From the NCBI RefSeq assembly GCF_006345805.1, contig NW_021836150.1, positions 1 through 64,000 of the forward strand: a stretch of DNA of 64,000 bases, read 5' to 3'. The notes under the pieces were generated by a model. That model had not been told where the DNA came from and searched no databases. It was given only the letters and a program-made list of their open reading frames with translations. The position numbers and the translations under genes were made by a program. Positions within the stretch are counted from its first letter, which is position 1. Each line of letters starts with the position of its first letter. The stretch is from Octopus sinensis. Taxonomy: Eukaryota. This document shows, piece after piece, positions 2,351 to 2,710 of this stretch.

Positions 2351-2710
2351 ATTCTTATTTCTTTACTGCCCACAAGGGGCTACACACAGAGGGGACAAAC
2401 AAACAGATAAAGTTGATTATATCGGCGGGACGGCGCTTCGAAGCATCATTCCCGGGTCGGGTCCGCGCGTTCGCCGCGAGGTTCGCGTCCTCCGACGTTC
2501 CCGCTCCGACTCAGGTGTAGCAGGCAGCCGGGGACCCGAAAGATGGCGATTATATCGACCCCAGTGTGTAACTGGTCCTTATTTAATCAACCCCAAAAGG
2601 ATGAAAGGCAAAGTCGACCTCGGCAGAATTTGAACTCAGAACATAGCAGTAGACGAAATACTGCTAAGCATTTCACCCGTTTTGCTAATGATTCCACTAG
2701 CTCGCCGCCA
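2351..2710 (-). mobile_element. SINE family C, young copy with 9-bp TSD, carrying a GC-rich insertion
   Basis: ggatgaaaggcaaagtcgacctcggcagaatttgaactc (reverse complement of CORE-like + B-box region); flanked by TATGATACT direct repeats. Confidence 0.88.
2425..2547 (+). pseudogene. probable 28S rRNA (D3 expansion/downstream core) retro-fragment
   Basis: 123 bp, 86/123 GC (70%). Ends in GGACCCGAAAGATGG (2532-2546), the conserved eukaryotic LSU motif 3' of D3. Flanked by a perfect 10-bp direct repeat GATTATATCG (2415-2424, 2548-2557). Only the 15-nt motif is recognised from memory. Confidence 0.7.

What the first reader, a model, noticed from the sequence alone, without database searches (positions are those of the whole stretch)
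2415..2557. Tailless, TSD-flanked 28S rRNA-like fragment inside a SINE
A 123-bp, 70% GC island interrupts a young SINE and is flanked by a perfect 10-bp duplication (GATTATATCG). It stops at GGACCCGAAAGATGG, the conserved LSU motif that normally continues TGAACTATGC, and has no poly(A) or simple-repeat tail. That pattern fits target-primed reverse transcription of an rRNA break product by a LINE enzyme, comparable to the tailless retropseudogenes described in mammals. It would also preserve a snapshot of the lineage's GC-rich D3 expansion segment.
Basis: partly seen in the sequence, partly recalled or inferred. Interest (0 to 1): 0.7.

Follow-up and report, generated by a model that had tools for sequence, protein, structure and literature searches.

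The report
Tailless GC-rich retro-insertion with 28S motif
A 123-base, GC-rich piece of DNA was pasted fairly recently into an older repeat in what looks like an octopus genome; its last 16 bases are the universal large-subunit rRNA sequence, but the rest could not be shown to be rRNA, so it is at most one more example of an already known kind of RNA-derived insertion.

Summary
A 123-bp insert (2425-2547) has 69.9% GC and 20 CpGs. It interrupts a SINE on the minus strand and is flanked by a perfect 10-bp duplication, GATTATATCG. It has no A-tail and no simple-repeat tail. Joining the flanks gives a site collinear with four related SINE copies.

The insert ends in GGGACCCGAAAGATGG. This 16-mer occurs in 76 of 121 real eukaryotic LSU loci I fetched. 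No other conserved LSU k-mer of 14 nt or more occurs anywhere in the 64-kb window, so the motif is not chance.

The 106 nt upstream are not recognisably LSU:
- Rfam reports no LSU hit at E<=10. Same-design controls on real LSU fragments score 37 bits and 15.4 bits (the second is the most divergent panel member).
- A profile of 116 LSUs aligns only the 16-mer. 730 of 1000 shuffles that keep the motif score as well.
- 115 of 116 real fragments score 16 bits or more in leave-one-out tests.

The host 28S sequence could not be reached with any tool, so "copy of host D3" remains untested.

Best reading (about 0.5): a LINE-mediated, tailless retrocopy templated at least at its 3' end by 28S rRNA, primed internally by GA microhomology. 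The "rRNA break" idea has no support, because the octopus 28S breaks on record lie elsewhere. This is a known kind of element in mammals. Interest is low to moderate.

The parts
2425..2547 (+). The 123-bp inserted segment (69.9% GC, 20 CpG, no tail). The strand is given in the sense of the LSU motif.
   Evidence: It is unique in the window: BLASTN with word size 7 and E<=10 finds only itself.
2531..2546 (+). GGGACCCGAAAGATGG, a 16-nt exact match to the universal eukaryotic LSU rRNA core (Rfam LSU_rRNA_eukarya model positions about 811-826).
   Evidence: present in 76 of 121 fetched LSU loci; the 14-mer GACCCGAAAGATGG was part of the fetch pattern, so it is present in all 121 by construction. 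One search gives the model positions and structure.
2547..2547 (+). Single C at the 3' junction. All fetched LSUs have T here, though that T was part of the fetch pattern. It is either an untemplated or mis-copied base, or a T>C change.
2415..2424 (.). Left copy of the 10-bp target-site duplication GATTATATCG.
2548..2557 (.). Right copy of the 10-bp target-site duplication. Its first two bases, GA, match the LSU sequence that follows GATGG-T.
2356..2710 (-). Host SINE interrupted by the insert. It has a tRNA-like head with a B-box-like GAGTTCAAATTC, and its tail ends ...GGGCAGTAAAGAAATA. ARAGORN does not call a tRNA here.
2342..2355 (.). Left copy of the host SINE's own target-site duplication (TATGATACTATTCT).
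   Evidence: 13/14 identical to 2711-2724.
2711..2724 (.). Right copy of the host SINE's own target-site duplication (TATGATACTCTTCT).

Best explanation
This is a retro-insertion made by a resident non-LTR retrotransposon enzyme through target-primed reverse transcription, without an A-tail.

Proposed steps:
1. The enzyme nicked the SINE body, with the two nicks staggered by 10 bp.
2. The freed DNA end annealed by a GA (possibly TGA) microhomology to the short single-stranded GAA junction that follows ...GAUGGU in large-subunit (28S) rRNA.
3. Reverse transcription ran 5'-ward for about 120 nt and then stopped or was truncated.
4. Repair of the staggered nicks produced the 10-bp duplication.

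Shown: the insertion, the duplication, the absence of a tail, the LSU identity of the last 16 nt, and the young look of the insert (perfect duplication, CpGs intact).

Inferred: the RNA intermediate, the enzyme, the priming site, and that the upstream 106 nt are the host's own lineage-specific D3 expansion rather than a second template.
For: - Perfect 10-bp duplication flanking a 123-bp insert. The reconstructed empty site is collinear with four related SINE copies.
- No A-run longer than 3 and no repeat tail.
- The host SINE itself has a 14-nt duplication, so staggered-nick retroposition operates in this genome region.
- The 16-nt LSU core motif sits exactly at the 3' boundary. No other conserved LSU k-mer of 14 nt or more occurs in the 64 kb.
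- CpG o/e is 1.33 and GC is 70% in a genome region with CpG o/e 0.31 and 34% GC. This suggests a recent copy of a GC-rich template.
- In the Rfam LSU structure, GAUGGU ends a helix strand and is followed by unpaired GAA. The junction reads GATGG-C-GA|TTATATCG, which is 19 nt of LSU with one mismatch if the GA of the duplication is counted.
- Ten 5'-truncated tailless 28S retrocopies are documented in human. [quoted passage not shown]
- An RTE-clade LINE is active and polymorphic in Octopus bimaculoides (PMC9115989).
- The last 33 nt keep the LSU layout of (T)AGC, 9 variable nt, then GGGACCCGAAAGATGG in the same register as the 121 fetched LSUs inspected by eye.
Against: - Upstream of the 16-mer there is no detectable LSU similarity. 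Rfam reports no LSU hit at E<=10. Same-length real fragments score 37 bits, and 15.4 bits for the most divergent panel member.
- The profile of 116 LSUs aligns only the 16-mer at 7.5 bits, and 730 of 1000 motif-preserving shuffles do as well. In leave-one-out tests, 115 of 116 real fragments score 16 bits or more.
- Ungapped identity in the 30 nt upstream of the motif is 11.4/30 against the panel, compared with 17.9/30 panel against panel.
- The highly conserved GAGC reads TAGC.
- No metagenome contig carries CAGCCGGGGACCCGAAAGATGG.
- Because the insert looks young, sequence decay cannot explain the mismatch. The host 28S would itself have to be an outlier.
- The junction base is C, not the T found in all fetched LSUs (that T was fixed by the fetch pattern).
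- The target site is not an L1-type TT/AAAA site.
Confidence: 0.5

Rival explanations
1. It is a severely 5'-truncated copy of a tailless retrotransposon (an RTE-like LINE or a non-autonomous partner), or of another uncharacterised GC-rich repeat, whose 3' end happens to contain or once captured an LSU-like 16-mer.
For: Short 5'-truncated LINE copies with duplications and no A-tail are the commonest insertions of this shape (established knowledge). An RTE LINE is active in octopus (PMC9115989). The upstream 106 nt do not look like LSU.
Against: No second copy or partial copy exists in the 64-kb, repeat-dense window, and no SINE in the window shares either end of the insert. 70% GC with CpG o/e 1.33 is unlike the other repeats here. 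The three open reading frames gave no protein matches. A 16-nt universal LSU core at the exact 3' end would have to be coincidence or a capture event.
Confidence: 0.2
2. It is a chimeric cDNA. Reverse transcription started on 28S rRNA, copied only about 20-35 nt, then switched to a second GC-rich RNA (another part of the pre-rRNA or an unrelated transcript).
For: The LSU match is sharp and confined to the 3' end. Template-switch chimeras of LINE enzymes with small and ribosomal RNAs are known in mammals (listed in the search result: 10.1101/2025.02.02.635956, not read; otherwise my own knowledge of Buzdin-type chimeras).
Against: No recognisable second source was found. Rfam gave nothing at E<=10, the fetched rDNA units outside the motif gave only chance-level matches, and the plasmid, prokaryote genome and metagenome searches found nothing. 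The (T)AGC plus 9-nt register upstream of the motif suggests that at least 33 nt are collinear with LSU.
Confidence: 0.15
3. It was captured at the DNA level. A fragment of rDNA or other GC-rich DNA was ligated into a staggered double-strand break, and fill-in created the 10-bp duplication. No reverse transcription was involved.
For: Both ends are truncated and there is no tail. This is compatible with filler-DNA capture (my own knowledge of templated-insertion classes).
Against: A clean 10-bp duplication in the size range of the neighbouring SINE's duplication (14 nt) is typical of endonuclease-staggered retroposition. The GA microhomology at the single-stranded GAA junction fits RNA priming.
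Confidence: 0.1
4. The LSU motif is a chance match, and the insert has nothing to do with rRNA.
For: Only 16 nt match.
Against: 762 conserved LSU 16-mers (both strands) against 128,000 window positions gives about 0.02 expected per window under uniform composition, and about 2e-5 for this insert alone. No conserved match of 14 nt or more occurs elsewhere in the window. The match abuts the insert boundary.
Confidence: 0.05

Closest known systems
Tailless retropseudogenes of mammals (Schmitz et al. 2004; Noll et al. 2015, PMC5322556), including ten 5'-truncated 28S rRNA-derived copies in human
   Same: It is flanked by a target-site duplication, lacks an oligo(A) tail, and is truncated at both ends relative to the presumed source RNA. 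The 3' end lies next to a single-stranded stretch of the source RNA, with a short match to the target site.
   Different: The source RNA is verified for only 16 nt. The host is a cephalopod, where the driver would not be mammalian L1. The target is not a TT/AAAA site. Nucleolar Pol I transcripts are rare sources even in human.
Dispersed rRNA pseudogene fragments (the 'rRNA / LSU-rRNA' class masked by RepeatMasker)
   Same: A short piece carrying LSU core sequence lies outside the rDNA arrays.
   Different: Such fragments are normally recognisable over their whole length by LSU models. This one is not.
5'-truncated copies of tailless non-LTR retrotransposons (RTE clade, active in Octopus: PMC9115989)
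   Same: Size, target-site duplication, missing A-tail, and insertion into another repeat.
   Different: No other copy exists in a 64-kb repeat-rich window. The composition is extremely GC- and CpG-rich, and there is an LSU core motif at the 3' end.
Template-switch chimeric retrocopies (U6/L1-type chimeras; LINE-1 recombination with diverse RNAs)
   Same: It could explain an rRNA-derived 3' block joined to unrelated 5' sequence inside one duplication-flanked insert.
   Different: Known chimeras usually carry a LINE or mRNA 3' part with an A-tail as the first template. Here the first template would be rRNA, and there is no tail.

Membership tests
Tailless retropseudogene | Flanking target-site duplication | tested here: met
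   Perfect 10-bp GATTATATCG on both sides, the only two copies in the window. The empty site is collinear with related SINEs.
Tailless retropseudogene | No oligo(A) or simple-repeat tail at the 3' end | tested here: met
   The insert ends ...GAAAGATGGC directly against the duplication. The longest A run is 3.
Tailless retropseudogene | Identifiable cellular source RNA, 3'-truncated relative to it | tested here: inconclusive
   Only the last 16 nt (19 with one mismatch) match LSU rRNA. The upstream 106 nt are unassignable. The host 28S was not available.
Tailless retropseudogene | 3' end at a single-stranded region of the source RNA, with complementarity to the target (internal priming) | tested here: inconclusive
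   The Rfam structure shows GAUGGU closing a helix strand and then an unpaired GAA. The duplication starts with GA. This is a 2-nt microhomology only, with a C where LSU has U.
Tailless retropseudogene | L1-type endonuclease target (TT/AAAA) and an L1 driver | tested here: not met
   The target reads AAAGTT|GATTATATCG. The driver in a cephalopod would be another LINE clade; RTE is reported active (PMC9115989). This is not testable here.
Eukaryotic LSU (28S) rRNA fragment | Universal core sequence present | tested here: met
   GGGACCCGAAAGATGG is present in 76 of 121 fetched LSU loci (the 14-mer was fixed by the fetch pattern, so it is in all 121 by construction). No other conserved LSU k-mer of 14 nt or more occurs in the window.
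Eukaryotic LSU (28S) rRNA fragment | Recognised by an LSU covariance model or profile over more than a short motif | tested here: not met
   No RF02543 hit at E<=10. Controls score 37 and 15.4 bits. The HMM alignment is confined to 16 nt and is no better than shuffles. 115 of 116 real fragments pass leave-one-out.
Eukaryotic LSU (28S) rRNA fragment | Contiguous near-identity to the host's own 28S (expected for a young copy) | not testable with these tools
   No cephalopod rDNA could be reached. The protein-word, exact-protein, DNA-pattern and paper-text routes all returned nothing.
5'-truncated LINE/SINE family copy | Other copies sharing the same 3' end | tested here: not met
   The insert is unique in the 64-kb window at word size 7, E<=10.
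MITE / cut-and-paste DNA transposon | Terminal inverted repeats | tested here: not met
   No inverted repeat joins the two ends of the insert. The only internal inverted repeat is 2457-2467 with 2529-2539.
C/D-box snoRNA retrocopy (guide complementary to this LSU site) | C box at the 5' end, D box at the 3' end, and the guide directly upstream of D/D' | tested here: not met
   Only chance-level Rfam hits (SNORD52 E=9, sR45 E=5.7). On the minus strand the LSU complement lies at the extreme 5' end and is not followed by CUGA (read).

The most novel reading that the evidence does not exclude
The 3' end at ...GAUGG marks a real, recurrent end of a 28S fragment in incirrate octopus. That would be a third processing or cleavage site, beside the protostome gap and the helix-88 break. 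Under this reading the insert is a faithful young copy of a strongly derived octopus D3 region, made by a LINE enzyme acting on a natural rRNA fragment.
Probability: 0.05. Interest if true: 0.6.

Novelty: new member of a known kind. Interest (0 to 1): 0.25.

Why it matters
If the template proves to be host 28S, this would be a cephalopod example of tail-independent trans-mobilisation of a Pol I transcript. It would be a datable snapshot of an rRNA expansion segment, and a hint that the octopus LINE machinery can prime on microhomology. All of this is of modest value, because the same class is documented in mammals. If the template is not 28S, it is one more anonymous truncated repeat. Either way it is a single-copy neutral insertion in repeat-rich non-coding DNA.

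Tried and rejected
1. Routes to the host 28S, all of which failed:
- Translating the three stop-free frames of the insert and the 138-aa ORF that spans it, to catch spurious rRNA ORFs in the protein collection: no candidates or no hits.
- Exact-protein look-ups of four window ORFs, to reach the same locus or an empty allele in public assemblies: not on record.
- Insert-specific DNA patterns: metagenomes, 0 hits; prokaryote genomes, 0 hits.
- Six 18-20-mers of the insert searched in 8 million papers: 0 hits.
- The octopus ribosome preprint and its supplement contain no D3 sequence.

2. Bacterial or plasmid origin: blastn against plasmids gave no match.

3. Structured-RNA reading: the fold is no better than shuffles, z = +0.66. 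With the last 28 nt left out, the upstream 95 nt fold into two adjacent hairpins that resemble the LSU D3 layout. Any 70%-GC sequence does this, so I give it no weight.

4. Apparent similarity of the insert's 5' part (GCTTCG...GCATCAT) to a fungal-type D3 hairpin (locus L116). I rejected it because the helix partner required by the LSU structure is absent and the match is at chance level (my reading).

5. snoRNA, hammerhead/Penelope, solo-LTR and MITE readings: there are no defining motifs.

6. Other rRNA fragments in the window: none apart from a decayed 5S-like copy. The 139 sub-threshold Rfam hits are almost all microRNA-precursor models (mir-297, mir-3149 and similar), apparently on simple-repeat sequence.

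7. An endonuclease target motif could not be derived from two sites.

Full report
**What is there**

The window is AT-rich (33.7% GC) and CpG-depleted (o/e 0.31). It has no convincing protein-coding ORF: 40 ORFs of 90 aa or more were inspected, and most read as simple-repeat translations. That call rests on my recognition of the SINE families, not on a tool result.

At 2415-2424 and 2548-2557 lies the perfect 10-mer GATTATATCG. These are its only two occurrences in the window on either strand. Between them lie 123 bp with 69.9% GC, 20 CpGs and CpG o/e 1.33, the strongest GC island in the window. The segment ends ...CCGGGGACCCGAAAGATGG plus one C. It has no A-run longer than 3 and no repeat tail. 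It is unique in the window.

**It is an insertion into a SINE**

The flanks belong to a SINE on the minus strand (2356-2710). The SINE has its own 14-nt duplication, 13/14 identical, at 2342-2355 and 2711-2724. I removed the insert and one copy of the 10-mer in a script. The SINE then reads CACTGGGGTCGATATAATCAACT. This aligns without any indel to four related copies in the window, which read CACTGGGGTCAATGTAA(T/C)TGACT. Whether the SINE is "young" cannot be judged, because no copy of the same subfamily is present.

**Is the motif real rRNA sequence?**

I fetched 120 metagenome loci and one viral-collection contig that contain GACCCGAAAGATGGTGAACTATGCC. The one locus checked with Rfam (L101) is LSU_rRNA_eukarya.

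- The insert's last 16 nt, GGGACCCGAAAGATGG, occur in 76 of the 121 loci. The 14-mer occurs in all 121, but only because it was part of the fetch pattern.
- I then took only k-mers conserved in at least 30 loci. The rest of the 64-kb window contains no match of 14 nt or more, and a single 13-mer. The insert has the 16-mer.
- With 762 conserved 16-mers, the chance expectation is about 0.02 per window and about 2e-5 for this insert.

The motif is therefore homologous to LSU rRNA, not a coincidence.

**Is the rest 28S?**

This is where the interpretation weakens.

(a) Rfam cmscan of the insert, run either with flanks or cut exactly at its ends so that truncated alignment is allowed, reports no LSU hit at E<=10. 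The same design was applied to 122-nt stretches ending at GATGG from real LSUs. It gives 37 bits (E=6e-8) for a metazoan-type sequence (L101). It gives 15.4 bits (E=0.053) for the most divergent member of my panel (L089).

(b) A profile HMM built from 116 distinct LSU sequences aligns the insert only over the 16-mer, at 7.5 bits. 730 of 1000 shuffles that keep the 16-mer and shuffle the upstream 106 nt score at least as well. In leave-one-out tests, 115 of 116 real fragments score 16 bits or more (median 59), with alignments running well beyond the motif.

(c) Ungapped identity in the 30 nt upstream of GACCC is 11.4/30 between insert and panel (best 16). Between panel members it is 17.9/30, with a 5th percentile of 12.

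(d) No contig in the JGI metagenome collection has CAGCCGGGGACCCGAAAGATGG.

What remains LSU-like is the register. The insert has (T)AGC, then 9 variable nt, then GGGACCC. In LSUs this is GAGC, 9 variable nt, then GGGACCC. At least one real LSU (L043) also reads TAGC there.

Because the insert looks young (perfect duplication, CpGs intact), decay cannot explain the lack of similarity. Either the host's D3-proximal region is itself an outlier, or the upstream part comes from elsewhere. One preprint reports numerous substitutions on the incirrate octopus branch in otherwise conserved 28S regions (PMC13321053). That keeps the first option open.

I could not obtain any cephalopod 28S. All indirect routes failed.

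**Mechanism**

A clean 10-bp duplication, in the size range of the neighbouring SINE's 14-nt duplication, points to endonuclease-staggered, target-primed reverse transcription. There are no terminal inverted repeats, no TG...CA ends, and no tail.

In the Rfam consensus structure the LSU sequence ...GAUGGU ends a helix strand. It is followed by three unpaired bases, GAA, before the next helix. The junction here reads GATGG-C-GA|TTATATCG. If the GA of the duplication is counted, the LSU match is 19 nt with one mismatch, and the copy ends inside that single-stranded GAA.

This is the pattern described for mammalian tailless retropseudogenes. Their truncation points lie in single-stranded regions, there is short complementarity to the target, and internal priming is favoured over pre-cut RNA. 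That study lists ten 5'-truncated 28S-derived cases in human (PMC5322556).

The priming step is my inference. A 2-nt microhomology is weak evidence, and the C is unexplained. The enzyme is unknown. An RTE-clade LINE is active and polymorphic in O. bimaculoides (PMC9115989).

The "rRNA break" proposal has no support. The reported octopus 28S discontinuities are the protostome gap and a break in helix 88 (PMC13321053).

**Rivals**

- A 5'-truncated copy of a tailless LINE or other repeat is the most ordinary alternative. It is weakened by the absence of any second copy in a repeat-dense 64 kb, by the extreme CpG content, and by the LSU core at the 3' end.
- A template-switch chimera, with an rRNA 3' block joined to another RNA, would explain the sharp edge of similarity. 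No second source was identified.
- DNA-level capture at a staggered break cannot be excluded.
- Chance is unlikely.

**Verdict**

It is partly unproven (whole-length 28S D3) and partly unsupported (break product).

The kind is already known in mammals. In a cephalopod it would be a new member of that kind, of modest interest. One BLASTN against the host rDNA and genome would settle it.

Noticed in passing
window 19663-19781 (-): A decayed 5S rRNA-like copy (Rfam RF00001, 39.4 bits, just above the gathering score of 38; 34% GC). Its 5' end is replaced by a (TA)n run. It ends in TTTTT and is followed directly by a tRNA-like SINE head. It is probably a 5S pseudogene or a 5S-derived retrocopy.
   Followed up: partly
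window 1766-2185(-), 3068-3482(-), 11337-11751(+), 45338-45750(+), 52172-52585(-), 62081-62495(-), 1032-1424(+): Seven near full-length copies (87-95% identical to one another) of a roughly 420-bp SINE. Its head reads AGGCGCAGGAGTGGCTGTGTGG, it has an internal microsatellite, and its tail is (GTAAAAGA)n-like. Their target-site duplications are short (6 bp or less) or not visible, unlike the 10-14 nt duplications at the finding. This suggests that more than one retroposition machinery has acted in this region.
   Followed up: partly
window 1881-1892, 3182-3193, 11626-11638: The body of that SINE contains GAGACCGATAG(C), identical over 11-13 nt to the conserved LSU 5'-domain motif GAGACCGATAGCGAACAAGTAC. 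It continues with a loosely similar AATAAGTAC. 11-mer hits to conserved LSU words are at about chance frequency in the window (22 found), so I treat it as coincidence.
   Followed up: partly
window 44020-44150: A tandemly duplicated unit of about 62 bp (TGTGCCACC.ACACAGGTGCCAGACGAGGCTGGCAGACGG..AC.CTCGGATGGTGTTTTTTATG) lies inside a moderately GC-rich patch. It is probably part of another repeat family.
   Followed up: no
window 10530-10670: A second, weaker GC-rich patch (about 61% GC, 7-8 CpG per 100 bp) of unknown nature. I did not look for flanking duplications.
   Followed up: no
whole window: At E<=0.5 Rfam lists 139 sub-threshold hits. Almost all are to microRNA-precursor models such as mir-297, mir-3149 and mir-1277. 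They appear to fall on the window's simple-repeat tracts and should not be read as microRNA genes.
   Followed up: yes
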